The notes under the pieces were generated by a model. The model was not told the origin of the DNA. It was given only the letters and a program-made list of their open reading frames with translations, and searched no databases. DNA of 64,000 nt, from assembly GCA_028826165.1 (NCBI GenBank), contig JAPDFW010000011.1:186001-250000 (forward strand), written 5' to 3'. The translations under genes were made by a program, and so were the position numbers. Every line of letters begins with the position of its first letter. The first letter of the stretch is position 1. Positions 16,601 through 57,745 of this stretch are shown here, piece by piece. This DNA comes from Anaeramoeba ignava BMAN. Its lineage: Eukaryota; Protista; Anaeramoebae.

Positions 16601-18220
16601 TCTAACACTAGTTGAATCTAAAGTAGCAATAACATAAGGACTAATTTCACCCCACCAATCATAAGCATCAAGTTTTTTACCATTAAGTAAATGAACAATG
16701 ATTCTACTGTCTGGATTTGTGAAATAATCACCAGGATCATAGCTTCCATCATATCTAGTAAAGTCTTGATCTCCCAAACAACCTGAACATACTGAACAAG
16801 TTAATTCAGTTTTGCCAAAAATTGTGAAATCCCAAAATTTTGGAAGAAATTTACTGATTATATCTGAAAATACAGGAAGTTCAATTTCAGGAAATCCAAT
16901 TTTTCCAATAATCTCAAAAAAAGTGTTGTATCCAAAAACTCCCTGTTGGCAATGTTTATTGTCAACACTGAAATTTGTTGTGATAGTTGGCTCAACTGAA
17001 AATTCTAATTTCGCTGCAGAATAAAGAGATATACCTATTTTGGGAATCAAAGCAACTCCAAGAAGAATTTCCAAATCAGTGCTATCACAAGAAGAGGAAG
17101 TTGTGAGGAGTTTATGTTCTAAAGATGATTGTTTATACCATCCTTGAGAAGGTTCATAAAAAACACCTAAGAATCCACGAGCAACAAATTTCTTCCCATA
17201 TTTCAACATATTTTGTAAATGAACTTCAGCTGTAAATTTTGTACTTAATCCTCCATATAAAGCAAGATTAACTGGAACTGGACCCATCAAAAAAAGTTTT
17301 GAAAAAAGTTCTATTTCTGAAATAATTTCTACTTCTTTTTCTCCATTCCAATCTACATCTCCAAGTGACACTTCTGCACTTGCTTCAAAAGTTGGACTAA
17401 TTGAAAACTCAACTTTTTTCAATGACCACCAAGAAATTGAGACTTGAAATTTGAATTGAATGTTTAAGTTTACGTAACAATTTGAACAAGTAACTAAATT
17501 CCCATAAACTGGGATAACATCTTTAGCTTTTCCATCTTCATAATTAAATCCAACATTCCAATTCTTTGTATACGAAGGACCCCAACCAAGACCTGAATCA
17601 AGATGATTTTCCATATTTGGATCATAAGGAGGATGTCCAGTTATTGTTGTTTCTACTGTATGAGCTACTTCTTCTAAATTGATTTTCTTGAGTTTGATTT
17701 TCATTATTTTTCTTCCATCTTTCATATCAACTTCTACTTCTTCAGGAAATTCCAAAGGTTCATAGAAAGGATAATCACAATTTCCACAAACAATAGCATC
17801 TTCTTTTTTCCATTTTTTTGTGATTTTAAGTGATTCTTCTGAGTTTCTTATTCTCATAAACAAAGTTGAAGAATTATCAAGTGAATTTTCTAAGAATTGG
17901 AAATCTTCAATATGTTCTTCAAAATCAATATTTGTGATTTCTCTTGAATGTTCAACATGATATCTCATTCTGATCATTTCTCCATTTTCTCTGTAATAAT
18001 CCTTAAAAGCTGCATGTTTTTTGATTCCTTTTTCTTTTGCTTTTTTATATTCTTCTTGTGTGAATCCTATTGTTTCTAAAACTTGTTTAGATAATCCAAT
18101 TTCATGTCTATTCTTTAAGTTCTCAACTACTTCTTTTTCTTCATAAGTAAGTTTGTTTTCTTTGATTGTTTCACCTAAAAAGAACAAAGTAAAAATTATT
18201 AAAAAAAAGAGGATTTTCAT
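13655..18220 (-). CDS. Large intronless secreted, predicted GPI-anchored surface protein (copy A, ~1521 aa): signal peptide, beta-rich N-region, two C2-like domains, beta-sandwich modules, (PT)n stalk
   Basis: Likely start [16 protein letters not shown] at 18220; C2 motifs [25 protein letters not shown] and NPFWD..FAIQAW.D...D.QIG; long PT repeat; SSSS plus hydrophobic C-terminus with no cytosolic tail. Confidence 0.85.
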
Positions 18221-18769
18221 TTCAAAAATATTTTTTTTATTATTTTTTAGCAATAAAAAATAAAGCTAAAAGTAAAAAAATGAATAAAAAAATTTTTTTT
18301 TCTTTTTTAAATTCAAATTGTCTACTTTTTTTGATCGTTGAAAACAAAAAAAAATTAAATTAATTTAATTAAAATAACAAAAGATAAATTAAAAAAAAGA
18401 ATGAAAAAGAGTTAAATTTCTTTTTTGATCATTCTTTTATTTTAAAACTTTGAATTTATGAAATTATGTAATTGTTTTCTTGTTTAAATTTTTTGTTTAT
18501 GGGGGCAAATGTAGACAAAATTTCTTTTAAGAGAAAAATGAAGAAAACAAATTAAATTGAAGCCAAATTCAAACTAATTTCAAGACAAAAAAAAAAGGAA
18601 TTTGAATTTTAATTTGATTTGAATTAGAATTAAAAAGAAAAAGGAATTTAAATTTAAATTTAAATTGGAATTTTAATTAAAAAGAAAAAGGAATTTAAAT
18701 TTAATTGGAATTTTACAAGTGGAATTTAAATTTAAATTTCAAAATAAAAAAAAGGAATTTGAATTTTAA

Positions 18770-20724: not shown

Positions 20725-23700
20725 ATTTAAAAATAAATATAATAAAGAAAATTAATAAAGAAAATTGGAAGAAAAAGAAGAAGAAAGAAAAATTGAAAAA
20801 TGAAAAATTTTTTTTATAATTTTTATTTTGAAAAAAGAAATTTGAAAAGAAATTTGAAAAAGAAAAAAAATTTCCAGTAAAAAAAATTTTCAAAAAGAAA
20901 TTTGAAAAGGAAATTGGTTGTTTCAAAAAAAAAATTTTTGTTCCTCTTTTTGAAAAAAAAAAAACTGGAATTGTTTTGAAAAGAAAAAAGAAATTTTGAA
21001 AAGAAATTTGAATTAGAAAATGATTGAAAAAAGTAAGAAATTAAGAAGTAAAATAGACCAAAAAAGATGAGAAGAAGAAGAAACGTAAGGAGTTGGAGAA
21101 GGTGTTGGTGTTGGTGTTGGAGTTGGTGTTGGTGTTGGTGTTGGTGTTGGTGTTGGTGTTGGAGTTGGAGTTGGTGTTGGAGTTGGTGTTGGAGTTGGTG
21201 TTGGAGTTGGAGTTGGAGTTGGTGTTGGTGTTGGTGTTGGTGTTGGTGTTGGAGTTGGAGTTGGAGTTGGTGTTGGAGTTGGAGTTGGAGTTGGAGTTGG
21301 AGTTGGAGTTGGTGTTGGTGTTGGTGTTGGTGTTGGTGTTGGTACAACAGTTGTTGGGATTACTAATTGAACTGATGAAAAACCAATTATTGGAAAGAAG
21401 CATTGTTCATCAAAACTAATTGTTAATGTTTCATCTTCTGTTATATAATATCCACTTAATGCTGGAATTCTAATCAATACACTTCTTAAATCTTCTGAAA
21501 TGTTTAATGTTGTATTGAAATCTGTTTTAAGTGAAGGTGCAACAATATCAATCCATCCAGTTGATATAGATAAATCAGATGAAAAAGAATCAATAAACAT
21601 GTTTGAAATAGTTTCTTCAAAACTAATTGTTTCATCAAAAACAATATCTCCTTCTGAAAGAGTAAAGTTAATCCAAGCATTTCCTGATCGAATTTTTTCA
21701 TCATCAATATCAGAATAAATTGAAATAGTAGGTTTTATCAAATCAACAAATTTAAAATAAGGATAATCTTGAGATGAAGTTATTATGTTGAAATACAAAG
21801 TATCACTAACAATAACTCCTCTTGAAGATAATGATTCAGCTGTGATAACCAAATCAGAGTTTTCAGAAGAAGTTGATACCCAATCTGTGTATTCAATAAT
21901 TAAAGAATCATTCAAAGCAAGGAAAACAGTTAAAGTTTCTGTCATATTCTCAATTTTCAAAACCATTCCATTTGATAAAAATGGAGGAGTCATCATAACA
22001 AATCTTTCTGTGTTTAAAAAGGAAGTATAATAGAACCAACCTTTAACTTGAGCAGGGAAAAATTCAGCAACATTAATTTGATAAACAGAATAAGGACGAC
22101 CTGTTGTTCGATAAATTGAAAAGTAAACAGTTGTTTCATATGGAGCTGAGAAGCTCATTGATGTTCCTTCCATATTTCCTGTTTGCATCTGATCATATGA
22201 AGATGGACCTGGATACGAAGTTGATAATGAAGCATAGATAATGTATGTTGCAGTATCTTCAAAATCAGTTGTGTTTTTTTGCAAATTAATCTTCACTTGT
22301 GAATTAACAAAATCATCTCGAGAAACTACTTTGTAATAGAAATATTGAATTTCATTATCATTGTTTGTTTCTCTTTGAATTGTTTCATAAGATTTTATTT
22401 GAGTTCGGGAGTTAAAAGTAGCTGTGAAAGTTCCATCATAAGGTTCTGAGAAATAAATTGCAGCATAAGCATCACCAAAATTAGAGAATGTAATAGAATC
22501 AGAAACATTGAAGGAATAAAGGAAATTTGTTGGAGATGGGAAAATATGACTATCTGTAGAATTAACAATTTTGGAACAAAGATAAACAGAAGCAATAAAA
22601 TTTGCAGGAAGAGTTTGATCAGCAGTAATCTGTAAACCAAGAATATCAGATTCATCAGGAATCATCATTTCAAGAAGAATAAGTGAGTTATTAACTGATG
22701 TTAAAGTTGTTTCTTTTCCAGGAATCAAATTCCAATAAGGTCCTAAAGATAAAGAATATTGAACTGATGTTTGATAAGCAAAAACAGCAATTGACATTTG
22801 ATAAATTTCAGGAATTTGAGTATTCCAAGACCAAATCCAATCACATACTGAAGGAGCATTTGTACAGCTATATCCAGCAATTAGAAGTTCTTCATCTACT
22901 AAATTTGTGATTGAATAAGAAGCCCATTTATTGTTGTTATAATCCCAAACAAAAAGATCAGGATTACCTGTTTTTCCATCTTCCAAAGAATTTGTTGATA
23001 CATAAATAAACATTCCATGAGCATATGCACTTGTTGGATCAACATCAATATCATAAAATTCAACAGCTCCAGCAGTTAATGTTCCTTGTGATTTCCCTTC
23101 AAAATTTGAATATCTCTGTAAATAAACAAGAACAGGGGTTGTGATTCCATTTCCACGTAATCCCCAAATAACTGTTCCATTTGGAGGATTAGGTGTATAG
23201 TAACTAGTATATCCAGTGTTAGAGTAATTAGCCGCAGAGCAAACTGAAGTAACTGAACTTGTATTTAACCAGAGATAAAAATAGAGAGATGAAGAATATA
23301 TATAATAATTTAGTCTTCTTACTCCTTCTGGGATTTGCATATCAAAGAAATAATATACCCAGTCATTAAATTGAATTGATTCGGAAGGTTTTCCAAAAAT
23401 TGTGGATTGAGTTCCTTTAAAAACTCCCATAGTAATATAAGTAGGATAAGCATCAGGAATATCATAACTTACATCACATCTTGTTGAATTACAAATTCCC
23501 AAATTGTAATTAAGAGTTGATCCAATTTGTGTATCGAAAATTAAATCTTCCCAAGCTTTAATTGCAAAATTAGTATCATCATCAAGATTTGAATAACAAG
23601 ATAATTTATCCCAAAATGGATTTGCTCCAGTCAAATGAGATGTCTCTAAGGGATCATATCCAGGTCGTTGATATTCCAAATAATATGTTTCAGAACTAGA

Positions 23701-26700
23701 TGGGAAATCACTTCCTGAAACAAAATGAAGAACTCCATCATAACTGTTAGTATTAACATCTACATAAATTGTTCCAGAATTTGGATTATCATCTCTTGAT
23801 AATTGAATAGTTTGAGTTGAGCAACCATCAGGAAGACAACCTGAAACATAAAGAGAACCTGATCCAATATAATCATCAATATTTCCAGTATCTTCATCAT
23901 AAACATCAAAGATTATCTGTGAGAGAGGATCAAAATTAGTGAATTTCATTGGATAACTATTCCAATTAGGATCTTGACCAGATGCAGAAGGAGATCTAAC
24001 ACTAGTTGAATCTAAAGTAGCAATAACATAAGGATTAATATCTCCAAATATGTCATAGGCATCAAGATTTTCACCATTAAGTAAATGAACAGTGATTCTA
24101 CTGTCTGAATTTGATGAATAATCACCAGGATCATAGCTTCCATCATCTCTAGTAAAGTTTTGATCTCCCAAACAACCTGAACATACTGAACAAGTTAATT
24201 CAGTTTTGCCAAAAATTGTGAAATCCCAATCCTTTGGAAGAAATTTATTGATTACATCTGAAAATACAGGAAGTTCAATTTCAGGAATTGTGAATCTCCC
24301 AATAACCTCAAAAAAAGTGTTGTATCCAAAAACTCCAGGTTGGCAATGCTCATTTCCAATACTGAAATTAGTTGTGATAGTTGGCTCAACTGAAAATTCT
24401 ACTTTCGCTGTAGAATAAAGAGAAACACCTATTTTGGGAATCAAAGCAACTCCAAGAAGAATTTCCAAATCAGTGATGGTATCGAAAGAAGAGTTACTTG
24501 TGAGGAATTCATGTTCTAAAGATGATTGTTTATACCATCCTTGAGAAGGTTCATAAAAAACACCTAAGAATCCATTAGCCTTAAATACTTTCCCATATTT
24601 CAACATATTTTGTAAACTAACTTCAGCTGTAAATTTTGTACTTAATCCTCCATATAAAGCAAGATTAACTGGAACATATCCCATCAAAAAAAGTTTTGAA
24701 AAAAGTTCTTTTTCTGAAATAATTTCTACTTCTTTTTCTCCATTCCAATCTACATCTCCAAGTGACACTTCTGCACTTGCTTCAAAAGTTGGAGTAATTG
24801 AAAACTCAACTTTTTTCAATGACCACCAAGAAATTGAGATTTGAAATTTGAATTGAATGTTTAAGTTTACGTAACAATTTGAACAATTAACTAAATTCTC
24901 ATAAATTGGGATAACATCTTTAGCTTTTCCATCTTCATAATTAAATCCAACATTCCATTTCTTAGTATACGAAGGACCCCAACCAAGACCTGAATCAAGA
25001 TGATTTTTCATATTTGGATCATAAGGAGGATGCCCAGTTATTGTTGCTTCTACTGTATGAGCTACTTCTTCTAAATTGATTTTCTTGAGTTTGATTTTCA
25101 TTATTTTTCTTCCATCTTTCATATCAACTTCTACTTCTTCAGGAAATTCTAAAGGTTCATAGAAAGGATAATCACAATTTCCACAAACAATAGCATCTTC
25201 TTTTTTCCATTTTTTTGTGATTTTAAGTGATTCTTCTGAGTTTCTTATTCTCATAAACAAAGTTGAAGAATTATCAAGTGAATTTTCTAAGAATTGGAAA
25301 TCTTCAATATGTTCTTCAAAATCAATATTTGTGATTTCTCTTGAATGTTCAACATGATATCTCATTCTGATCATTTCTCCATTTTCTCTGTAGTAATCCT
25401 TAAAAGCTGCATGTTTTTTGATTCCTTTTTCTTTTGCTTTTTTATATTCTTCTTGTGTGAATCCTATTGATTCTAAAACTTGTTTAGATAATCCAGTTTC
25501 ATGTCTATTCTTTAAGTTCTCAACTACTTCTTTTTCTTCATAAGTAAGTTTGTTTTCTTTGATTGTTTCACCTAAAAAGAACAAAGTAAAAATTATTAAA
25601 AAAAAGAGGATTTTCATTTCAAAAATATTATTTTTATTATTTTTTAGCAATAAAAAATAAAGCTAAAAGTAAAAAAATGAATAAAAAAAAATTTTTTTTT
25701 TCTTTTAATTCAAATTGTCTACTTTTTTTGATCGTTGAAAACAAAAAAAAATTAAATTAATTTAATTAAAATAGCAAAAGATAAATATTGAAATAACAAA
25801 AGATAAATTAAAAAAAAGAATGAAAAAGAGTTAAATTTCTTTTTTGATCATTCTTTTATTTTAAAACTTTGAATTTATAAAATTATGTAATTGTTTGCTT
25901 GTTTAAATTTTTTGTTTATGGGGGCAAATGTAGACAAAATTTCTTTTAAGAGAAAAATGAAGAAAACAAATTAAATTGAAGCCAAATTCAAACTAATTTC
26001 AAGACAAAAAAAAAAGGAATTTGAATTTGAATTTGAATTAGAATTAAAAAGAAAAAGGAATTTGAATTTAATTGGAATTTTACAAGTGGAATTTAAATTT
26101 TAATTTCAAAATAAAAAAAAGGAATTTGAATTTTGATTTAAATTAGAATTAAAATTAAAAAAGAAAAAGGAATTTGAATTTGAATTTGAATTAGAATTAA
26201 AATTAAAAAAAGAAAAAGGAATTTAAATTTAATTGGAATTTTACAAGTGGAATTTAAATTTTAATTTCAAAATAAAAAAAAGGAATTTGAATTTTGATTT
26301 AATTTAAATTTAATTTTGATTTAATTTTAATTTAATTTTGATTTAATTTTGATTTAATTTTAATTTTAATTTTAATTTAATTTTGATTTAATTTTGATTT
26401 AATTTTGATTTAATTTTAATTTAATTTTGATTTAATTTTGATTTAATTTTAATTTAATTTTAATTTAATTTTGATTTAATTTTGATTTAATTTTTAATTT
26501 AATTTTAATTTAATTTTAATTTAATTTTAATTTAATTTTAATTTAATTTTAATTTAATTTTAATTTAATTTTAATTTAATTTTGATTTAATTTTGATTTA
26601 ATTTTGATTTAATTTTGATTTAATTTTAATTTAATTTAAATTTAATTTTAATTTAATTTTAATTTAATTTTGATTTGATTTTAATTTAATTTTAATTTAA

Positions 26701-30400: not shown

Positions 30401-33400
30401 AACAAGATTGGTGATTTATCGAATGCAGTTTTGAGTGTGTTACCTTTTTGTCCTTCTTTGCAACATGTGAATTTATCACAGAATTTGATTAAGGATTATC
30501 GGTCACAAGTGATTTATGCGTGTAGGAATTTAAGAGGAACGAATCGGCAACCTGGGTTATCAACGATAGATGATAAAGGTGTTACAAGTGAAGAATATAT
30601 ACAGAGTCTTTATCAAGCTGTAAAAATATAAATAAAATATAAATAAAATATTTAAAATATATTTAAATAAAATATTTAAAAAATATTTAAAAAATATAAA
30701 TAAAATATAAATAAAATATAAATAAAATATTTAAATAAAATAGGGCGCAATGAACCAACTAGAAATCGAAAAAACAAAATGGATGCTTTTGGAATTCCAA
30801 CAATTTGGTCATTTCCAATTAAGAGGAATAGACAAATTCACTAAATATATTAAAGCTATATCTTTCCCATCAAGTAATCTCGGTTACTCTTCAGTTAATA
30901 AATTCAACCAAATCGAAGTTCTTGTTCTTCAAAACAATAACCTAACAGAAGTTAAAGGAATCCGCAAACTCAAAAAATTACGATGGCTTGATTTATCAAA
31001 AAACCCAAACTTAAACATTATAAAAACATTGCAAAGTTTAAAAGAAATAACAACACTAGAAATTGCAGCATTTGCATCAGATATATCAACAGACATTGTA
31101 TCAGATGGTTTGAAACCCAAAATTCTCAAAACAACATTTTCTCAATCAAACCAGAATGAAAAAACAAGTTTATCAGCATCAAACACACAATATCGAGGAA
31201 GAGTATTGAGTTCGTTAGTTCCAAATAACACAAAATTAACAACTATTGATACATATGCAATTACAGTTATTGAAAGAGCAGATGCATATTTGACACAAGG
31301 AATGGATTCCAAAATGGTTGAGAAATATCGTTTTTATCTTGCAGTAACATTGAATGCAACAAAGGATTTAAAACAAATTGATGAAATTGATGAAAATGAA
31401 GATGAAAATGAAAATGAAAATGAAAATCAAAATCAAAATGAAAATCAAGATGAAAATGAAAATCAATTTGAAAATCAATTTGGTGAATATGAAAATAATG
31501 AAAATGACGAAAAAATCAAAAAACAACAATCAAGTGTGAGAAGTCTTCAAGATATTGATGATGATTTTCTTGAAATTCTTGGACAATCACCAACAATTCG
31601 ATTTCCAACAAACACATGGATTGAAGAAATCAACTTTTCACCTTCAGAAGTTGAACCAGGAAAACAATATGAAATTAGCAAAGTGATTAGTTTAAAGCAT
31701 TTATGTAGGTTGCAATTAAAATATGCGAATTTTGACGGATTTGAAAACTTAGAAAAATTAAATCTCTCAAATAATCAATTGGAAAATATTGAAACACTTG
31801 GATTGGTGAATCTACCAAAACTTCAGGAATTGGATCTGAGTTACAATAAGATTGGAAATAAAGTGAGTGAACTTTCTGCTCTATTCGACAAATTAGGAGT
31901 GCTTGAAATGGTGGCATTGCGAGGAAATCCATGCATGAAGGATTCAAATTCAAGACAAAGCATTCTCAACGGAATGACATCAATCCGGCAGATGAAAAGT
32001 CGGTTGAGAGTTATTGATAGTGAAATTACAATTGGAGAGCGTGTAAATGCGTGGAAGGCACAGGGTGTGTCTGAGAAACAGTGCGAGGAGTTAAGATTCC
32101 AAGCGGTTATTTTTGTGCGGTTTAAAAACAAGAGCGAACTCGATCTTTCGAATTGCGAACTAAGTGAGATTGATTTAAGTGATGAACAATTCAAGGATTT
32201 AGAAAAATTAAATTTGCAAACGAACTTGTTTGTGTCATTGAAGAAAATAAAGGGATTAGCAGGTTTAACTCAACTGAAAGTACTTGATTTGCGAAATAAC
32301 AAACTTAAAAAATTAGATCGAGTTTTGGAATTGATAGGCAATTTCCCATCGTTACTTTCGGTTGGATTTTCTGGGAACAAATTTGAGGATTATTCTGCGA
32401 AAAATATCATTTCACGAATATATCAACTGAGAGATCCGAATTACACATTGCAATATTTAGATTCCAAAGAGATCAGTGCTGAGGATATTATCCAATTGAT
32501 CAACAAAACGAGTCTGAAAGAGCATAAAAAAAAGAAGAGCATGAAAAACCTGAAAATTGGAGGTGAGACTTATCATATGGAGATGGACGACGACAAGTTC
32601 CGTTTCCAGCTCAATTTCAACAGAAGATTTCGCCAGTATGGAGTGAATGTGCCAAAGAGCGAAATGCTTGAATTGGATCTTTCGAATTGCGATCTACGCA
32701 AAATTGATCTCCAAGAATTCAAATCGCTCAAGAAACTTTCTTTGCAGAACAATCACATTACAGACGAAAGTTTCCAGAACTCGAACATTCTGCAAATTGC
32801 ACAATTGGAGGAGCTTGATATCAGCGGGAATAAATTGAAGGATGCGAATAAATTTTCGCAAGTTATCAATATTCTTTATAATTTGAAGTCGCTTTTTATC
32901 GCGAATAATCCAATGTTTGGCAAAGACACCCCAAACGAAAGAAGCAAATTTTTGGGCAAAATTCCCAATGTTTTTCAACGACCCACACTTGCATTTCTTA
33001 ACGGAAAAAAAATAACAATCCGAGAACTTACGCAGGCATTAACGCTGCAGAATAACGAGAGTGCGGAGCGTATGCGGATCAATATGATTGCCCACAGATT
33101 GGAATTGGAGCCTTCTGGATACACGCAATTAAGACTTGTTGATTATGAAATTAAGATTTTTTACGATGTTCGAATGTTTGAGGATCTCACTCATCTCTCG
33201 CTTGGCTATAATAAAATCACGAATCTTAACGGCCAAGGATTGGAATATCTCCACAAACTTCGTGTGCTTGATCTGCGAAACAATCAAATCTCAGTTTTTG
33301 CGGATGCGATCCAAATCATCCAGGAAATAAGCACATTGCGACGACTTTACTTGCAAAATTGCACAGGTCGTTCGGACACACAGAAACCCGAGGCGTACAT

Positions 33401-36101
33401 CAAGGATGTGTGCATGACGCTTCGCGGATTGGAAATGCTTGATGGGATATCGAATCCCTATCCTCTCCAGCCCGAGCATTGGGAAGAACTCTCCAAGCTC
33501 ATGAAAATCACCAACGGAAAGATCGGCAATCCGCATAAAATAACGGTTCTTGATCTTTCAAACAAAAAATTTGCTTCCAATCTTTTTGAGCCCGTTCTTT
33601 CTTCTCTCTCCGTTCTTCCCATCAAGGATCTCATCATGAAGGACAATCCTTGGGAAAATGTTCCGCATTATTGGTTCAAGATTGTGTATGCAATCAAGTC
33701 CCTACAGAGTCTGGACGGCGTTGCGATCAGTATTGCTCAACGCGATAACGCAATCAATCATCTTGCAAGATTGAACCTGATCCCCAAAAAACCGAGAACA
33801 ACCCAAAACGTTCCAAATGCGAAAAATCCAGAAAATTCGCAAAATGTCACAAATCAAGAAAATGCCGGAAAGGTGAAGTTTGAAGATCAAAATAACGGAA
33901 AAAAAAAGGGAGACGAATTGCTAGATAATCGGGACTTTGTTGATAAGAACATGAACAAGATTGTATCGGGAGCAGGAGTAGTAACGGGAGCGATGGTAAC
34001 GGACACTGGAGATATTGATCTTGATCCGAACCGGTACAATTCAGGCGCGCAAGAAGGAATTGACCTTTTTCAGCAGGGACAAGAAGAAGTGAAAACAGGG
34101 ATGGCACGGTTTGACAGTTCTATTGGGACTTTCGATGGGATTCCTGGACGATTTCTAACGAAAGGAGAGATTGTCATTTCATATCTCCAGATTTTGGGCG
34201 TGTTGATCACCCTGATAAACCCTGATCTCTGGCCTGATGTATTTCTGCGGTTCTCATGGATCACGTTTCCGTTCTCAATTGATATTGATTTCCTTGTTGT
34301 TGCATTTGACATCCACGTTCCCTTCCAATTTGAGTATGCGAAATTTGTGGTTTTCATGGCGCTTCCGATAGCGCTTTATCTTGTGTTTCTGATCCAATTC
34401 AATCGCGAGCGGTGGAAACGGTGGTACCACTTCAACTGGAAGTCCACAAGAGCGAAAATCTGGATCTCATTGGTGATTCTTATTGCGATAACTGTTATTG
34501 TTGGGATTTTCATTGATTGGAATGATTTCCGGGATAACGACTACAAAATGACAGCAACTCAAAACGGATTTATTCTTGTTTTTTCGGGCGTGTTTATTCT
34601 CTTGTATTTCCTGAGCTATCTCGTCATCCGCAACTTCCGCAAGCATTGGGACGACGATCGCCACTGGTTCCGTTACCAAAAACACAAGGACCGTTTCATT
34701 CTTTTTGCGCTTGCAGTTCTTTATCTTCCGTTGGCAAGAGTGATTTTATACAATTTCAAGTGCGACAGCACACAATCTCATCTTCTTCCGTTCCCCTCTT
34801 ATCCCTGTCCAAGATCAATCGGCGATTTCAAGGCTCTTCAATGGATCTCTATTGTCTTCGGTCTGCTTTATATCTTTGGAATGCCTTTTTTCTTCCTGTA
34901 TTTGATCAGAAAATCAATCAAAGAAATTGACACTATTTATCGAGTGACAGAAGATCTGAAAGAAATCAAAGAACTCAAGAAAAAAGAGCTCAAAACCGAA
35001 GAGCATAAGAAACTCATCAAGCAAAAAAAACGGAAATTCAAGATCAGATATTCGCGCGTTGTCAAGGATTACAAATGCTTCCAAGCGTATTTGTACAACT
35101 CTTACAAAAGAAGCACTTGCTATTACAAGCCGCTTCAAATGCTTGAGAAATTCCTTTTGATTCTGATGACAGTTGCCTTCACTTCCGAGAAGATTCTTGT
35201 TGCCGTTGTTTGTGGATTGATGGCGGTTTTCACTCTGATTGATTTGGTTGTGAGTCCGTTATCGAATAGTCTCGAGTCGATCATGGAAACAAGTGCTCGA
35301 ATAAGCAACACAGTCAATGTTTTTATGGGCGTTCTTCTTGCATACTCGCTTTGGGGAATCAATAACGCTTCATCCGGAACTGTTCTTCTTTTGAGTGTTT
35401 TGATTTGTCTTGCTATTGTCTTGTTAATATTTATTTTTGAGCCAATTTTGCGTTGTTGTAAAAAGAAACCATCAAAAACGTTATCTCTTGATGATTCAGA
35501 AAACCGAGATGAAAAACCGTTGAAACCAATTATTCAAAAGGAAGATTCAGAAGATGATCTTGATAAAATTGACGATGATAATAATAATAATAAAATTGAT
35601 TATCAAAAAATTGATAATAATAAAATTGATAATATTAATGACAATAATGATGAAATGATGGATCTTGATGATCTTGATATCCAAGATGATTCAAGAGCGC
35701 ACAATCAAGGGCAATCTTTCTTTATTGAGGATGATTTCATTCAACTTGAAAATTTTGATGATTTCCAAGATCTTGATGATTTAGATCAAGATGAAAATCA
35801 AATTGAAAATCAAAATCAAAATCAAAATCAAGATGAAAATTTATATGATTTTTTGGAAAATGATGATACTCAACAAGATTCTGCTCCTAAACTTAATATT
35901 CCAAAGCATATTAAAAAACAACTTTCTTATTCAGGTACTTTATCTCTTAATCGCAAACAAGTTATTTCGACTGATTTTAATGTTGAAACTTTGAGAATGA
36001 GACAAAATTTGAAACATGATCTTGAAAAAACAATTACGAAAAGTCAAGTTGATCAATATCTTTTTGATGAATTAAGACTTGAATCTAGTGATGATAATTG
36101 A
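27481..36101 (+). CDS. Giant leucine-rich-repeat protein with C-terminal polytopic membrane domain, 2221 aa; exons 27481-27691, 29523-30619, 30744-36101
   Basis: Exons total 6666 nt in frame. Many LxxLxLxxNxI repeats with LRRcap-like YR..VI..L..L..ID ends; about 10-11 hydrophobic segments starting at EIVISYLQILG..WP; acidic tail. Confidence 0.88.
27735..29510. repeat. 12-bp A/T array (ATAAATAAAATT/ATAAATTAAATT)n filling LRR-gene intron 1
   Basis: Directly visible. Confidence 0.95.
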
Positions 36102-43800: not shown

Positions 43801-46800
43801 TTAATCTGCTCTTCTTGGTCTTTTAGGTGTATTAGTTGAATTTTGTTTTTGAGAATTTGGATCAGAAGTTTTTTCAGATTTATTAGAAAATATGAAGAAT
43901 TGCAAAACTAAAATTCCATTAAGAACCACACTTGTCACAGTAGAAATGATAAGTAGTTGATCTTTAACATCTTGAATAACAGTGAAAAGGCGAACAATAG
44001 TTCCCAAAAATGCAAGGAGTGTTGATATCAAAGATAGTTTTCCTGTGCTTTTGTTTTTGAAATTTAGATATATTTGGGGTGCTCTTGAAAGAATTATAAG
44101 TGGTGTTGATAAGAGTTGAAGTTTTTGAAGGATGAAGATATCAATTTGACCAAATGCAGAAGCAGCAATGAATCCAGATGTATATTCAAGAAAAAAAAAA
44201 TAAATAGCAAATCAAGGTTTAAACTTTAAATTTCAAATCTGATTTTAATTTTAATTTTAATTTTAATTTCAAATCTAATTTTGATATTAATTTTGAATTT
44301 AATTTTAATTTTAATTTCAAATCTAATTTTGAATTTAATTTTGAATTTAATTTTAATTTTGATTTTAATTTTAATTTTGATTTTAATTTTAATTTTAATT
44401 TTAATTTTAATTTTAATTTCAAATTTAATTTTAATTTTTATTTCAAATTTAATTTTAATTTTAATTTTAATTTTAATTTTAATTTTAATTTTAATTTTAA
44501 ATTTAATTTTAATTTTAATTTTAATTTTAATTTTAATTTTAATTTTAATTTTAATTTTGATTTTAATTTTGATTTAAAAAAGTAGCATTAATAAAAGGAT
44601 ATATAACTCCAAATGGAATAAAAAATAAGATAGTTTTTTTTGAAAATAAAAAAATCAGAAAAACAATAAGCAAATTTTGAATCAACAAAAAAGCATTTTC
44701 ACCATAAGTTGTTAAAGGAAATTTGCTAAGATAACCATAAACCAACGGAATAGCAACACTTTAAAAGAATAAAATATTATTTTGAAATAAAATATAAATT
44801 TGAAATAAAATATTAATTTGAAATAAAATATTAATTTGAAATAAAATATTATTTGAAATAAAATATTATTTTGAAATAAAATATTATTTTGAAATAAAAT
44901 ATTATATTGAAATAAAATATTAATTTTGAAATAAAATATTATTTTGGAATAAAATATTATTTTGAAATAAAATATTATTTTGAAATAAAATATTATTTTG
45001 GAATAAAATATTTAATTTTATTTGAAATAAAAATATTAATTTGAAATAAAATATTAATTTTTAAAATATTAATTTGAAATAAAAATTAATTTGAAATAAA
45101 ATATTAATTTGAAATAAAAATATTAATTTGAAATAAAAATATAAAATTGAATTTGAAATAAAATATTAATTTGAAATAAAATATTATATTGAAAATTTGG
45201 AATAATAAAAAATATTAATTTGAAATAAAATATTATTTTTGAAATAAAATAAATTTAAAAAATTATTTTTGAAATAAAAAATATTAATTTGAAAATTTTT
45301 GAAATAAAATAAAATATTATTTTGAAATAAAATAAAATATTAATTTGAAATAAAATATTAATTTGAAATAAAATATTATTTTGAAATAAAATATTATTTT
45401 GAAATAAAATATTATTTTGAAATAAAATATTATTTTGAAATAAAATATTATTTTGAAATAAAATATTATTTTGAAATAAAATATTATTTTGAAATAAAAT
45501 AAATTTGAAATAAAATATTATTTTGAAATAAAAATTATTTTGAAAAATATTTTTGAATAAAATATTAATTTGAAATAAAAAATATTAATTTGAAAAAATA
45601 AAATTTATTATTTTGAAATAAAATATTATTTTGAAATAAAATATTATTTTGAAATAAAATATTAATTTGAAATAAAATATTATTTTGAAATAAAATATTA
45701 ATTTGAAATAAAATATTATATTTGAAATAAAATATTATTTTGAAATAAAAAAATATTATTTTGAAATAAAATATTAATTTGAAATAAAATATTATTAATT
45801 TTGGAATAAAATATTTTTGGAATAAAATATTATTTTGAAATAAAATATTTGAATAAAATATTATTTTGAAATAAAATATTATTTTGAAAAAAAAATTTTG
45901 AAATTATTTTTTAAAATAAAATATTATTTTGAAATAAAAATTATTTTGAATAAAATATTAATTTGAAAAAAAATATTAATTTGAAATAAAAATAAAATTT
46001 TGAATAAAAAAATATTAATTTGAAATAAAAATTAATTTGAAATAAAATATTATTTTTGAAATAAAAATTATTAATTTTGAAATAAAATATTAATTTGAAA
46101 TAAAAATAAAAAATAAAAATATTAATTTGAAATAAAAATATTTTGAAATAAAATATTATTTTTGAAATAAAAATTATTTTGAAATAAAATATTAATTTTG
46201 AAATAAAAATTAATTTGAAATAAAATATTATTTGAATAAAATATTATTTTGAAATAAAATATTAATTTGAATAAAATATTATTTTTGAAATAAAATAAAT
46301 GAAAAAATATTAATTTGAAATAAAAAATTTTGAAATAAAAATTAAAAAATAAAAATTAATTTGAAAAAATATTAAAAATAAAATTATTTTGAAATAAAAA
46401 ATATTATTTTGAAATAAAATATAGTAATTTGAAATAAAAATATTAATTTGAAATAAAATATTATTTTGAAATAAAAAATATTATTTTGAATTTTGAAATA
46501 AAATATTATTTTGAAATAAAAAAAATTTGGAAATAAAATATTTTTGAAAATAAATTTTGAAAATATTATTTTGGAATAAAATATTATTTTGAAATAAAAT
46601 ATTATTTTGAAATAAAATATTTATTTGAAATAAAATAAAATTTGAAATAAAATATATTTTGATTAAAAAATAAATATTATTTGAAATAAAATATTATTTT
46701 GAAATAAAATATTAATTTGAAATAAAATATAAATTTTGAAATAAAATATTAATTTGAAATAAAATATTGAAATAAAATATTAATTTTGAAATAAAATATT

Positions 46801-47467
46801 AATTTATTTTGAAATAAAAATATTAATTTGAAAAAAAATATAAATTTGAAATAAAATATTATTTTGGAAAAAAAAATATTATTTTGGAATAAAATATTTA
46901 ATTTGAAATAAAATAAAATTATTATTTTGAAATAAAATATTAATTTTGAAATAAAATATTATTTTATTTTAAAATAAAATAATTTTGAAATAAAATATTA
47001 ATTTGGAGTTGAATAACCAATTATTTTGGAATAAAATATTATATTGAAATAAATAAAAATATTATAAAAATAAATGAAATATTATTTTGAATAAAAATAT
47101 AATAAAAATTTTGAATAAAAATAAAATTCTGACATCAAAGAATTAATTTAAAATAAAAATAAACATCATTACATTTTGAATAAAAAGTCCTTGAAATAAA
47201 ATTTTTCTTTTGAAATATTTTAATAATTTGTGGTACTTTAAGAATTACTGAAAAAACAACTATTCCAAGTCCAAGTAATTTGGATATTATTTGTTTCAAA
47301 CAATTTGTATCCATAATTTTTTGTTCTAAAAGAATTTCATAACATTCTTGACTTATTAAACCAAAGAATTTTTCTATAAAAATAAGTTATAAAAATAAAT
47401 AATATTTTTGATTTTTATTAATTTGAAAAAATTTTTTTTATTATGTTTTTTTACGAGTTGCATTCAT
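43801..47467 (-). CDS. MPDU1: Mannose-P-dolichol utilization defect 1 (MPDU1/Lec35, PQ-loop); exons 47467-47455, 47373-~47165 (end garbled), 44758-44603, 44179-43801
   Basis: CLKQIISKLLGLGIV..LKVPQIIKI, VYGY..FPLTTYGENAFLLIQN, SRAPQIYLNFKNKSTGKLSLIS..GTIVRLFTVIQDVKD..VVLNGILVLQ. Confidence 0.9.
44180..44602 (-). other. U12-type (minor spliceosomal) AT-AC intron, 423 nt, phase 2, in MPDU1
   Basis: 5' end ATATCCTTTT at 44602; CCTTGAT at 44217-44211 matches the CCTTRAY branch consensus; 3' end TATAC at 44180. Splicing gives in-frame FGV-I-SGFIAA. The last upstream AG gives TTT AAA CCT TGA (stop) in the required phase. Confidence 0.9.
44770..47120. repeat. ~19-20-bp minisatellite (TTTGAAATAAAATATTATT)n filling MPDU1 intron 2
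   Basis: Directly visible; irregular homopolymer lengths suggest lower consensus quality. Confidence 0.9.
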
Positions 47468-47943: not shown

Positions 47944-49872
47944 TTACGTTTTTCTATTTTTGATTTCTATTTTTATTTTGAAATTTCTTTTTATTTCCAT
48001 TTTGATTTCTATTTTTATTTTGATTTCTATTTTTATTTTGGAATTTCTTTTTATTTTTATTTTTATTTTGATTTTGATTTTTATTTTCATTTTGATTTTC
48101 ATTTTCATTTTCATTTTCATTTTCATTTTGATTTTGATTTTCATCTTCATTTTCATTTTCATCTTGATTTTCATCTTGATTTTCATCTTGATTTTTATTT
48201 TCATTTTCATTTTCATTTTCATTTTCATTTTCATTTTCATTTTCATTTCATTTTCATTTTGATTTTCATTTTCATTTTCATTTTCATTTTCATCATTATC
48301 ATCATCAAAATCAAAATCATCAAAAATTTCATTTTCATTTTCATCCAAATCAATGGAAACATTTGGAATTTTATTACTCAACTTTTTGAGTTTAGCGATA
48401 AAAAAGCCATCCATATTCAATTTATGAGGATAAATTCTTCTAGCGAGTTTAAGACTAGAATTGAACCTTCTTTCTCTAAATTTAGTAAGACCAGGATCAC
48501 CGAATTCGATCCCAGTACTAACAAGTTTAACATGCCTTTTCCTTAACGCGTAATCAATAACCCACTCATTCTCCTCAATAGTAACAGAGCAGGTTGAGTA
48601 TACAATATAACCTCCAGTTTTAGAGTTTGCATTTACTGAATCGATAGCGGAAAGAATAAGTTCTTTTTGAAGATGAGTTGATCGTCTGACATCTTTGATG
48701 CCTTTAGTAAGCTTTATAGAATTATCCCTAGAAACGACACCCAAGCCAGTGCACGGAGCATCCAAGAGAACTCTATCGAAGCCACCAAGAACCTTTGGGA
48801 AATCGCGACCGTCATGCATTGTAACAAGAGTATTTTTGACACCGAGTCGATGAATATTCGAAATCAAAGATTTGATTCGATCTTGATTTGGATCATTAGC
48901 GACCAAAATACCGGTATTCTTCATAAGACTTGCAATATGAGTAGTTTTGCCACCGGGAGCCGCAGACATATCGAGTATTCTTTCATGCTCCTGCGGGGCT
49001 AGTGCCATCACAGGGAGGAAACTGGCGGCGGATTGAAGCATGTAATATCCGGCTAAATATTCTGGAGTAGCACCAAGTGGCACTTGTGATTCGTACACTA
49101 CGAGCCCCACATTACTCCACTTGGCAAGAGGATCGAGGTTAACTCCTCGATGGATTAAGATCTGCGCTAAGTCTCTTCTTCGCGTTTTCAAAGTGTTTGT
49201 TCGGATAGTCACTGGTCTAGGTGCTTCGTTTGCCTCAAGAAACTCAATTAATTCTGACACTGAAAAAAGTTGGGAAAATTTCTGAATGATGAACCGATTG
49301 TATCCGTAATACTCAGACAAATTATTATATAGTTTTTTCAAGTACCATTTTCGACTTCGATTTCCTTCGCGATTTTTTTGGTAATCAGACAAAACATATA
49401 CTATGTCCCCAATTCGTTGCTTCAGAAGCGCTAAATCCGCCCCTTCGTTTAATGGCTTGCTGATTTGTTGTCCTGATTCAAATACTATCGTTTGTTGTTC
49501 CGCTATGTTCGTTTGAAGCTCTTCTGCTCCATCTTCAATCTCTTTTTTTCTTTCTTTTTCAATTTGTTTTGATTCTTCTATCAGTTTGCTCATTTCGTCT
49601 TCGTCTTCGTCTTCGTAATCTTCTTCTTTTTGTGGTGTTTTTTCTAGTTTGAGTTTGATTTTTTGGGGTTCTTTTTCTTATAATAAATAAAATACAATTT
49701 GAATTAAATTAAAATTATGAATTAAAAAATTTCAATTAAATTAAATGATTTATTTACTTTCTTCCTTCATTTCAATTACTTTCGTTTGAATTGGCTTCTT
49801 AGATTTATTTACTTTTCTTTTTTTAGGTTCATTTATACCTATATCTTCTTCTTCAAATTTAATTCTTGACAT
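47944..49872 (-). CDS. NOP2: Large-subunit rRNA m5C methyltransferase Nop2/NSUN1; exons 49872-49758, 49676-47944; tail probably frameshifted
   Basis: RTNTLKTRRRDLAQILIHRGVNLDP, GATPEYLAGYYMLQ, ILDMSAAPGGKT, FDRVLLDAPCTG, YSTCSVTIEENE, MDGFFIAKL. Confidence 0.96.
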
Positions 49873-49934
49873 TTTAAAAAGAAATGAAAAAAATGAAAAA
49901 AAATGAAAAAAATGAAAAAAAATTTTTTATTGGA

Positions 49935-51950
49935 TTTTATTTTAAATTTTATTTTAAATTTTATTTTAGATTTCATTTTAGATTTCATTTTAAATTTCAT
50001 TTTAAATTGTATTTTAAATTGTATTTTAAATTTCATTTTAAATTTTATTTTAGATTTCATTTTAAATTGTATTTTAAGTTTCATTTTAAATTGTATTTTA
50101 AATTTCATTTTAAATTTCATTTTAAATTTCATTTTAAATTTCATTTTAAATTTCATTTTAGATTTTATTTTAGATTTCATTTTAGATTTCATTTTAAATT
50201 TCATTTTAAATTGTATTTTGAATTTCATTTTAGATTTCATTTTAAATTTCATTTTAAATTTCATTTTAAATTTCATTTTAAATTTCATTTTAAATTTCAT
50301 TTTAGATTTCATTTTAGATTTCATTTTAAATTGTATTTTAAATTTCATTTTAAATTTCATTTTAAATTTCATTGTAGATTTCATTTTAGATTTCATTTTA
50401 GATTTCATTTTAGATTTCATTTTAAATTTCATTTTAAATTGTATTGTAAATTTCATTGTAGATTTCATTTTAAATTGTATTTTAGATTGTATTTTAGATT
50501 TCATTGTAAATTTCATTTTAGATTTCATTGTAAATTTCATTTTAGATTTCATTTTAAATTTCATTTTAGATTTCATTTTAGATTTCATTTTAAATTTCAT
50601 TGTAGATTTCATTATAAATTTTATTTTAGATTTCATTTTAAATTTCATTGTAAATTTTATTTTAAATTTTATTTTAAATTGTATTTTAGATTTCATTTTA
50701 GATTTCATTTTAAATTTCATTTTAAATTTCATTTTAAATTTCATTTTAAATTTCATTTTAAATTTCATTTTAGATTTCATTTTAGATTTCATTTTAAATT
50801 TCATTGTAGATTTCATTATAAATTTTATTTTAGATTTCATTTTAAATTTCATTGTAAATTTTATTTTAAATTTTATTTTAAATTGTATTTTAAGTTTCAT
50901 TTTAAATTTCATTTTAAATTTCATTTTAAATTTCATTTTAAATTTCATTTTAGATTTCATTTTAAATTTTATTTTAAATTTTATTTTAAATTGTATTTTA
51001 AGTTTCATTTTAGATTTCATTTTAGATTGTATTTTAAATTGTATTTTAGATTGTATTTTAGATTGTATTTTAAATTTCATTTTAAATTTTATTTTAAATT
51101 TTATTTTAAATTTCATTTTAAATTTCATTTTAAATTTTATTTTGAATTTCATTTTAAATTGTATTGTAAATTTCATTGTAGATTTCATTTTAAATTGTAT
51201 TTTAGATTGTATTTTAGATTGTATTTTAGATTTCATTTTAAATTTCATTTTAAATTTTATTTTAAATTTCATTGTAAATTTTATTTTAGATTTTATTTTA
51301 AATTTTATTTTAAATTTTATTTTAAATTTCATTTTAAATTGTATTTTAGATTTCATTTTAAATTTTATTTTAAATTTCATTTTAAATTTTATTTTAAATT
51401 TCATTTTAAATTTTATTTTAAATTTTATTTTAAATTTCATTTTAAATTTCATTTTAAATTTCATTGTAAATTTTATTTTAAATTGTATTTTAAATTGTAT
51501 TTTAAATTGTATTTTAGATTTTATTTTAGATTGTATTTTAAATTTCATTTTAAATTTCATTTTAGATTTCATTTTAAATTTTATTTTAAATTGTATTTTA
51601 AATTGTATTTTAAATTGTATTTTAAATTTCATTGTAAATTTTATTTTAGATTTTATTTTGAATTTCATTGTAAATTTTATTGTAGATTTCATTTTAGATT
51701 TCATTTTAAATTCCATTTTAAATTTCATTTTAAATTCCATTTTAAATTTCATTTTAAATTTCATTTTAAATTGTATTTTAAATTTTATTTTAAATTTTAT
51801 TTTAAATTTTATTTTAAATTTCATTTTAAATTTCATTTTAAGTTTCATTTTAGATTTCATTTTGAATTGTATTTTAAATTTCATTTTAAATTTCATTTTA
51901 AGTTTCATTTTAGATTTTATTTTGAATTGTATTTTAAATTGTATTTTAGA
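49935..51950. repeat. 2-kb intergenic 12-bp array (TTTTA[A/G]ATT[TC/TT/GT]A)n with higher-order block duplication
   Basis: Lies between the NOP2 start and the DUF1648-gene stop; produces three ~700-codon spurious ORFs. Confidence 0.95.
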
Positions 51951-51957
51951 TTTTCAA

Positions 51958-52512
51958 TTAAAAACGATCACTTGGATCATCATTATGGTTTAACCAAATT
52001 GCATTTTTAGGTTTTTTAAATCTCAAAAGAAGTTTCACAATTACGAATATAAAGAATAGAATAAAAACAATAAAATCAACAATAAAAATCCAAGCATAAG
52101 GAGGTTTTTCATGAGGATCTCTAACATTAGCAGCAAAAATAACAGCAAAAAGAATAATCAAAAACAACTGAATAACAATTCCCATTGAAAACAAATAAGA
52201 ACTCAAAACACGAAATGTTCTTGATTTTCTACTTGGCGATAACCAGTATTCCTTATTTGGCATATTAATTGAACTTTCGGGACAAACCCTAATACAAAAT
52301 GGAAGTGAAAAAAAAAGCAATCCAATTAATGTCCCTGCAACCCAATAAACAGCTATTAAGGTCCATTTGCCGGAATATCCGGTTGGTTTTCCATCAAAAG
52401 AATAATGTGATGCACATTCATCAGGTAAATATTTCGAATAAATTCCTCCATGTATCCAAACTACTAAAATTAACCCTAAAATTGTAAGCATAGATAAACT
52501 GTATGAATTCAT
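51958..52512 (-). CDS. DUF1648-like (SdpI/YhfL-related) 4-TM membrane protein, intronless, 184 aa
   Basis: TM-LPDECASHYSFDGKPTGYSGK-TM matches the DUF1648 LP..vp.Hf...G.pd....K pattern; INMPNKEYWLSP motif recalled from bacterial members. Confidence 0.7.
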   Translation of the reverse strand: MNSYSLSMLTILGLILVVWIHGGIYSKYLPDECASHYSFDGKPTGYSGKWTLIAVYWVAGTLIGLLFFSLPFCIRVCPESSINMPNKEYWLSPSRKSRTFRVLSSYLFSMGIVIQLFLIILFAVIFAANVRDPHEKPPYAWIFIVDFIVFILFFIFVIVKLLLRFKKPKNAIWLNHNDDPSDRF

Positions 52513-57130: not shown

Positions 57131-57745
57131 TTAATTTTTTTTGGTTGATTCAATTAAATCATTAACAATTGAAGAAAGATTTTTTGTTTGAGAATTTTGA
57201 GATCTGATCAATTCATTAATTCTTTCTTGAATTTTTAAATCAAATTTGAATTTATGAGATTCAAAACAACTTAAAACAAAAAAAATAATTGATAAACTTG
57301 ATTGAATAATATTTTCATTTTCAGAAAATAAACATTCCAGAATTAAACTTGGACCATCTTCCTTTTCAATAATAATTAAATTATAAGGATCTATGCAGCA
57401 ATTACAAATTGAACCAATTCCAAGTTCAATTAATTTTTGATTAGATTCTTTTAAAGATTGGACAAAAACTTCAATTGCTTTTACTTTTCTAAGAAAGTTA
57501 TAATTAACAGGATCATAAGCAAAATTTCCCAATTTCGCTAATGATTCAATTTTTGATTCTGTTTATTTGTTGTAAATTTACTTAGTTATTTTTGTTTTAT
57601 TGTTGAAAAAAAAAATTGTTTTAATTTTTTTACTTTCTGATTTAGTTTCTTTATATTCTTTAACAAGTTGCTTTAAAAATTCAAGTCTATTTAAGCCTTC
57701 TCCTGATTGATTTCTTTTTCTGATTTTACTAATAGAAGAAAACAT
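57131..57745 (-). CDS. ARMC7: Armadillo repeat-containing protein 7, 179 aa; exons 57745-57634, 57558-57131
   Basis: MFSS......R....G.NRLEFLKQLVKEY, LGNFAYDPVNYNFLR, LIELGIGSICNCCID are the diagnostic ARMC7 motifs. Confidence 0.9.

What the first reader, a model, noticed from the sequence alone, without database searches (positions are those of the whole stretch)
44180..44602. AT-AC U12-type intron in MPDU1: evidence of an active minor spliceosome
Seen: on the minus strand exon 3 ends ..GGA GTT AT, the intron begins ATATCCTTTT (perfect U12 donor), carries CCTTGAT about 32 nt from its end (CCTTRAY branch consensus) and ends TATAC. Joining gives GV-I-SGFIAA, in frame with the second PQ loop. 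The last AG upstream of exon 4 yields an immediate TGA in the required phase, so I found no GT-AG alternative. Every other intron I resolved is GT-AG with a highly degenerate donor, so a 10-nt perfect match is hard to explain by chance. Phase 2 fits the known phase-0 depletion of minor introns. Established: U12 splicing has been lost in many protist lineages, including well-studied metamonads such as Giardia and Trichomonas. Inference: if the host is an Anaeramoeba-like metamonad, it retains a minor spliceosome where one may not be expected, and GT-AG-only annotation would miss it.
Basis: partly seen in the sequence, partly recalled or inferred. Interest (0 to 1): 0.92.

Follow-up and report, generated by a model that had tools for sequence, protein, structure and literature searches.

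The report
Real minor intron in Anaeramoeba MPDU1
A gene of the anaerobic amoeba Anaeramoeba ignava carries a real intron of the rare 'minor' type, and the genome encodes much of the second splicing machine that removes it; the genome paper's supplement already suspected this, so the new parts are the machinery itself, a branch signal the paper said was missing, and an intron position shared with plants.

Summary
Confirmed. The 423-nt intron (44602-44180, minus strand) begins ATATCCTTTT, has CCTTGAT 32 nt from its end and ends TAC. A public transcriptome protein of Anaeramoeba ignava reads GVISG across it, so it is spliced there. The genome holds U6atac, a probable U11, and ARMC7 (in this window), PDCD7, SNRNP25 and CENATAC. 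U12 was not found and U4atac is unresolved. The headline is not new: the supplement of the genome paper (PMC11550330) counted 33 AT-AC introns and inferred a minor spliceosome. This scan also noted such introns on other contigs of this genome. What I did not find in the papers searched: (1) the snRNA and protein machinery; (2) a U12-like branch motif (TYYTTGAY) in 11 AT-AC introns, 12-42 nt from the 3' end, where the paper saw none and 10-20 nt is the textbook range; (3) two plant MPDU1 genes have a U12 intron in the same phase within one codon, so the intron is probably ancient; (4) the deposited gene model misses it. New member of a known kind; interest 0.45.

The parts
44180..44602 (-). U12-type AT-AC intron, 423 nt, phase 2, splitting codon Ile129 of MPDU1
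   Evidence: junction peptide in transcript protein P0121
44593..44602 (-). U12-type 5' splice site ATATCCTTTT; +4 to +9 can pair with AAAGGA in the U11 candidate and in U6atac
   Evidence: pairing read by hand
44211..44217 (-). Predicted branch site CCTTGAT, branch A at 44212, 32 nt from the 3' end; no AG or AC between it and the acceptor
   Evidence: branch use inferred, not mapped
44180..44182 (-). 3' splice site TAC
44232..44580 (-). AAAATT-type simple repeat filling most of the intron
   Evidence: flagged as repeat
44603..44758 (-). MPDU1 exon before the minor intron (residues 78-129); preceded by an AG at 44760-44759
43801..44179 (-). MPDU1 last exon (residues 129-254, second PQ loop, stop TAA)
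47455..47467 (-). MPDU1 exon 1, followed by an 81-nt GT-AG intron (47454-47374)
47216..47373 (-). MPDU1 exon 2, matching residues 5-57; its continuation (residues 58-77, about 47215-47130) is garbled in the assembly
57131..57745 (-). ARMC7, a minor-spliceosome-specific factor; two exons, GT-AG intron 57633-57559
   Evidence: best solved-structure match ARMC7 (7dvq_K), E 2.4e-17, next best 4e-7

Best explanation
This is a U12-type intron removed by a retained minor spliceosome. Shown: the boundaries, the spliced product at protein level, and genes for U6atac, ARMC7, PDCD7, SNRNP25 and CENATAC. Inferred from the known mechanism: U11 pairs with UCCUUU at the 5' end; U12 pairs with the CCUUGAU site and bulges A44212; U6atac replaces U11 through its AAGGAGA box and forms the catalytic core; the lariat forms at A44212 and the exons join at the first AC downstream, 32 nt away. 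The intron is probably inherited from an early eukaryote, since two plant MPDU1 genes have a U12 intron in the same phase at the same or the neighbouring codon.
For: Junction peptide in a transcriptome ORF. U6atac over the full model, 29.9 bits, genome E 2.7e-4, with AAGGAGA box, AGC triad and a changed but paired internal stem-loop with the two-base bulge; major U6 is a separate locus. U11 candidate with 5' AAAGGA, four-way junction and AUCAA loop. The same TCCATAAT element ends 59-61 nt upstream of U6atac, U11 and U4; its background is about 3e-4 per 5-nt window. Pfam hits over cut-off: CCDC84/CENATAC (67), PDCD7, Ubiquitin_4/SNRNP25; ARMC7. Ten more frame-preserving AT-AC introns with the same signals. 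Plant position match. Published count of 27 AT-AC introns with the U12 donor.
Against: U12 snRNA was not found in six searches. U4atac is unresolved. U6atac and U11 score below Rfam gathering thresholds; U11 alone is E 0.2 with an atypical Sm site and a folding z-score of only -1.3. No hits for zf-U11-48K, zf-SCNM1, CRIPT, and only one DIM1 gene, though short models split by introns are easily missed. No reads could be laid. The branch distance exceeds the 10-20 nt described for minor introns.
Confidence: 0.93

Rival explanations
1. The intron is real but is removed by the major spliceosome (a U2-type AT-AC intron), and the minor components are relics.
For: U12 not found; the long, pyrimidine-rich spacer after the branch site (74% pyrimidine) resembles a major intron 3' end; the paper saw no U12 branch consensus.
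Against: The donor is the full U12 consensus, not a U1-type one; U6atac keeps its donor-pairing box and catalytic elements; four minor-specific proteins have intact matches; the motif recurs in 11 introns.
Confidence: 0.04
2. Minor spliceosome, but the CCTTGAT at -32 is not the branch; a nearer or degenerate site is used and spacing is ordinary.
For: A second TTCTTGA lies next to the acceptor (its A is 6 nt from the end); the distal site lacks the upstream pyrimidines the others have; branch sites were not mapped; my intron set was partly chosen on the motif.
Against: Six nt is below the described range; in the other ten introns the motif is single and clear, against a 2% background before AT-rich YAC sites, and six of them also exceed 20 nt.
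Confidence: 0.2
3. The splice signals are chance matches or assembly errors in AT-rich repeat DNA.
For: The donor 10-mer occurs 834 times; the same gene is garbled in the assembly at residues 58-77; no reads confirm the letters.
Against: An independent transcript protein matches both flanking exons exactly and joins them at this point; plants have a U12 intron there.
Confidence: 0.02

Closest known systems
U12-type (minor) spliceosomal introns, AT-AC subtype
   Same: Donor ATATCCTTT, CCTTRAY-like branch site, YAC acceptor, phase 2; host genes of a kind I recall as typical (POLE2, DCP2, ORC3, GPR107/108-like; from memory, not checked).
   Different: Branch site always has G before the branch A (TYYTTGAY); branch-to-acceptor distance 12-42 nt, median 25 in ten introns, against 10-20 nt in the review read (PMC8199999).
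AT-AC / U12-motif introns of A. ignava BMAN (PMC11550330, Supplementary Note 1, Table S3B)
   Same: Same genome and class: 33 AT-AC introns, 32 with (G/A)TATCCTTT, minor spliceosome inferred.
   Different: That text found no conserved branch point and names no minor snRNA or protein; this intron is absent from the deposited model KAJ5080252.1.
U12-type GT-AG intron in plant MPDU1 (Populus, Ancistrocladus)
   Same: Phase 2, U12 donor GTATCCT, same or neighbouring codon.
   Different: GT-AG subtype, 80-86 nt; plants have a second U12 intron near residue 202 that A. ignava lacks; three animal genes and a ciliate gene have no intron at this place.
Blastocystis minor introns (PMC10639083)
   Same: Strong AT-AC enrichment (77% there; 27 of 32 in A. 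ignava).
   Different: Blastocystis favours phase 0 (49%); the 11 introns here are 3/3/5 in phases 0/1/2.

Membership tests
U12-type intron | 5' splice site RTATCCTT | tested here: met
   ATATCCTTTT at 44602
U12-type intron | Branch site like TCCTTRAY | tested here: met
   CCTTGAT 44217-44211; sequence match only
U12-type intron | Acceptor YAC or YAG used in the mRNA | tested here: met
   TAC; transcript protein joins here; protein-level evidence
U12-type intron | Branch point 10-20 nt from the 3' end (typical, not defining) | tested here: inconclusive
   Predicted branch is 32 nt away; not mapped
U12-type intron | Excision depends on U11/U12/U6atac | not testable with these tools
   needs knock-down or in vitro splicing
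Minor spliceosome | U6atac snRNA | tested here: met
   C71:58882-58994, full model, E 2.7e-4, functional motifs kept, below gathering score; U6 separate (108)
Minor spliceosome | U11 snRNA | tested here: inconclusive
   C1:50977-, E 0.2; right architecture, donor-pairing 5' end and shared promoter element; atypical Sm site; probable
Minor spliceosome | U12 snRNA | tested here: inconclusive
   not found; only a small share of candidates is scored by the tool; pattern searches blank (23, 65, 76, 78)
Minor spliceosome | U4atac snRNA | tested here: inconclusive
   Rfam hit is major U4; two promoter-linked loci start with an 11-mer complementary to U6atac, one lacks K-turn and Sm site, the other could not be fetched
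Minor spliceosome | Minor-specific proteins | tested here: met
   ARMC7, PDCD7, SNRNP25, CENATAC found; 48K, SCNM1, CRIPT, TXNL4B not detected; RNPC3, ZCRB1, 35K, ZRSR2 not tested; ZMAT5 not resolved (115)
MPDU1 (PQ-loop) | Two PQ loops and full-length similarity to named MPDU1 proteins | tested here: met

The most novel reading that the evidence does not exclude
A. ignava runs an AT-AC-dominated minor spliceosome with a G-containing branch motif and relaxed spacing: the acceptor is simply the first usable AC after the branch, 12 to over 40 nt away, unlike the tight 10-20 nt rule of animal and plant minor introns. This would explain why the branch motif was missed, and the true number of minor introns would be well above the 32 published.
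Probability: 0.5. Interest if true: 0.62.

Novelty: new member of a known kind. Interest (0 to 1): 0.45.

Why it matters
A 2023 reconstruction lists Metamonada among lineages that lost the minor spliceosome completely (PMC9887622 supplement). A retained system in Anaeramoeba, the sister group of parabasalids, means the metamonad ancestor had both spliceosomes and lost one several times. It also gives a same-clade reference for the open question of why Giardia snRNAs look like major/minor hybrids (PMC6679479). [quoted passage not shown]

Tried and rejected
Genome-wide excess of RTATCCTTTT over its reversed control (834 against 101) first suggested hundreds of minor introns; inspection showed most sites are ordinary coding or intergenic DNA, so the excess was rejected as evidence. 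The U4atac Rfam hit L003 is major U4. The U12-like hit L046 (E 1.5) has a good 5' end and Sm site but lies antisense inside a 303-aa ankyrin/membrane ORF, has no promoter element, lacks the GG that pairs with the branch site and folds poorly; rejected as probable chance. L034 as U4atac: two stems with U6atac, better than 99.5% of matched controls, but noticed after the fact and without K-turn or Sm site; left open. Main-text searches for Anaeramoeba with minor spliceosome or U12 were empty; the prior report sits in a supplement.

Full report
Observation. On the minus strand the exon ends GGA GTT AT at 44603, the intron opens ATATCCTTTT at 44602, carries CCTTGAT at 44217-44211 and closes TATAC at 44180. 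It is 423 nt long, in phase 2, and mostly an AAAATT repeat. Joining gives GVISGFIAA; of the cut registers that give this peptide only AT-AC is a known splice pair. The four AGs inside the intron all precede a TGA in frame with the last exon. The case rests on the combination of signals and on the transcript.

Host and transcript. A search with the last exon returned a 254-aa protein identical over that exon. It is an Anaeramoeba ignava transcriptome ORF in EukProt and reads FGVISGFIAA across the junction. That is independent, protein-level evidence that the AT-AC junction is used. The deposited NCBI model (KAJ5080252.1, 139 aa, on a contig of the same 844,100-nt length as C2) skips residues 51-173, so it lacks the intron. 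The assembly also fails to encode residues 58-77 cleanly, probably a consensus fault in repeat DNA, which may contribute to the bad model. The protein has two PQ loops and matches named MPDU1 proteins over its length.

Machinery. U6atac matches the whole Rfam model at C71:58882-58994 (29.9 bits, E 2.7e-4), keeps the AAGGAGA box and AGC triad, and has a re-lettered but paired internal stem-loop; major U6 is elsewhere. A U11 candidate at C1:50977 is weak by score (E 0.2) but has a 5' AAAGGA that pairs with donor positions +4 to +9, a four-way junction and the AUCAA loop. U6atac, this candidate and U4 share TCCATAAT ending 59-61 nt upstream, an element with a background near 3e-4 per 5-nt window; I read it as the snRNA promoter element. 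U12 was not found and U4atac is open. Proteins over Pfam cut-off: CENATAC, PDCD7, SNRNP25. ARMC7 lies in this window at 57131-57745. All four are listed as minor-specific in PMC9887622. The 48K finger, SCNM1, CRIPT and a second DIM1 were not detected, which is weak evidence given short models and introns.

Other introns and the branch site. In fetched loci I found ten more AT-AC introns that keep the reading frame, eight with a Pfam match on a flanking exon: two Per1 paralogues sharing one position, DCP2, importin-5, PKD2, a BRCT-repeat gene, a DHHC enzyme and ORC3; two more look like POLE2 and GPR107/108 by eye only. All have TYYTTGAY (the MPDU1 one ACCTTGAT), against 2% of AT-rich YAC sites in general. 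In ten measured, the branch A lies 12-42 nt from the end, median 25, seven above 20; no AG intervenes, and the acceptor is the first AC in nine. A genome-wide pattern for short introns of this form gave 34 matches (28 distinct donors, about half intron-like by eye) against 5 in the reversed control. Caveats: the set was partly chosen on the motif, branch sites are predicted, and only the MPDU1 junction has transcript support here. Three clear introns in 40 unselected donor sites would scale to about 60 in the genome (roughly 20-165), so an undercount beyond this one gene is likely but not proven.

Age. Populus and Ancistrocladus MPDU1 have a U12-type GT-AG intron in phase 2 at residue 125. It is the same codon as the A. 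ignava intron counted from the conserved upstream Gln, and one codon off in the MAFFT alignments; a one-residue indel nearby makes the difference unresolvable. Two rare-class introns of equal phase within one codon are unlikely by chance (about 1% by a rough count), so common descent is the better reading (inference). Three animal genes, a ciliate gene and three fungal genes have no intron there.

Mechanism. Shown: boundaries, product, component genes. Inferred from the established pathway: U11/U12 recognise donor and branch, U6atac takes over the donor and catalyses branching at A44212, and the exons join at the first AC downstream. Confidence 0.93 for minor-spliceosome excision; about 0.75 for this branch position.

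Prior knowledge. So the headline is published, though only in a supplement, while a 2023 reconstruction still lists Metamonada as a complete loss. The scan index holds 32 first-reader notes with these words in this genome; they are not independent support.

Verdict. A real U12-type AT-AC intron: a new member of a known class in a genome where the class was already reported. The added value is the machinery, the overlooked branch motif with long spacing, the plant-shared position and the broken annotation. Interest 0.45.

Noticed in passing
window 57131-57745 (-): ARMC7 gene, a minor-spliceosome factor, 12.5 kb from the minor intron; the proximity is probably chance.
   Followed up: yes
window about 47215-47130 (-): Assembly does not encode MPDU1 residues 58-77 in one frame; only fragments appear in shifting frames beside a long AT repeat. 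Likely a consensus error.
   Followed up: partly
L001 1433-1440, L002 1431-1438, L003 1441-1448: TCCATAAT about 60 nt upstream of U6atac, U11 candidate and U4: a candidate snRNA promoter element shared by genes that are normally read by different polymerases.
   Followed up: partly
L034 1568-1640 (C24:478290+) and G000:C95:193500-193588 (+): Two unrelated loci have the promoter element followed about 60 nt later by the same 11-mer, complementary to U6atac; possible U4atac genes or relics.
   Followed up: partly
L003 1508-1648 (C95:129934+): Major U4 snRNA gene; major U6 at C70:323239-323347 (-).
   Followed up: partly
L018 and L086: Two Per1/PGAP3-like paralogues carry AT-AC introns at the same position and phase, so the intron predates their duplication.
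   Followed up: partly
L096 1701 (-) (C2:52021): Possible GT-AG minor intron: GTATCCTTTT at a sharp coding-to-AT-rich boundary, no clear branch motif.
   Followed up: no
L102, L107 near residue 202: Plant MPDU1 has a second U12-type intron (phase 1) that A. ignava lacks.
   Followed up: partly
window 13655-18253 and 21013-25650 (-): Two tandem ORFs of about 1540 aa, each with a C2 domain near residue 517.
   Followed up: no
window 30750-36101 (+): 1783-aa leucine-rich-repeat ORF in the most GC-rich part of the window.
   Followed up: no
window 49839-52010: About 2 kb of TTTAAAATGAAA-type repeat giving stop-free ORFs on both strands; no Pfam match, probably not coding.
   Followed up: no
G000:C132:27132-27222 (-): Promoter element, AT-only spacer and an RYAAGR at U12-like distance; unverified U12 lead.
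   Followed up: no
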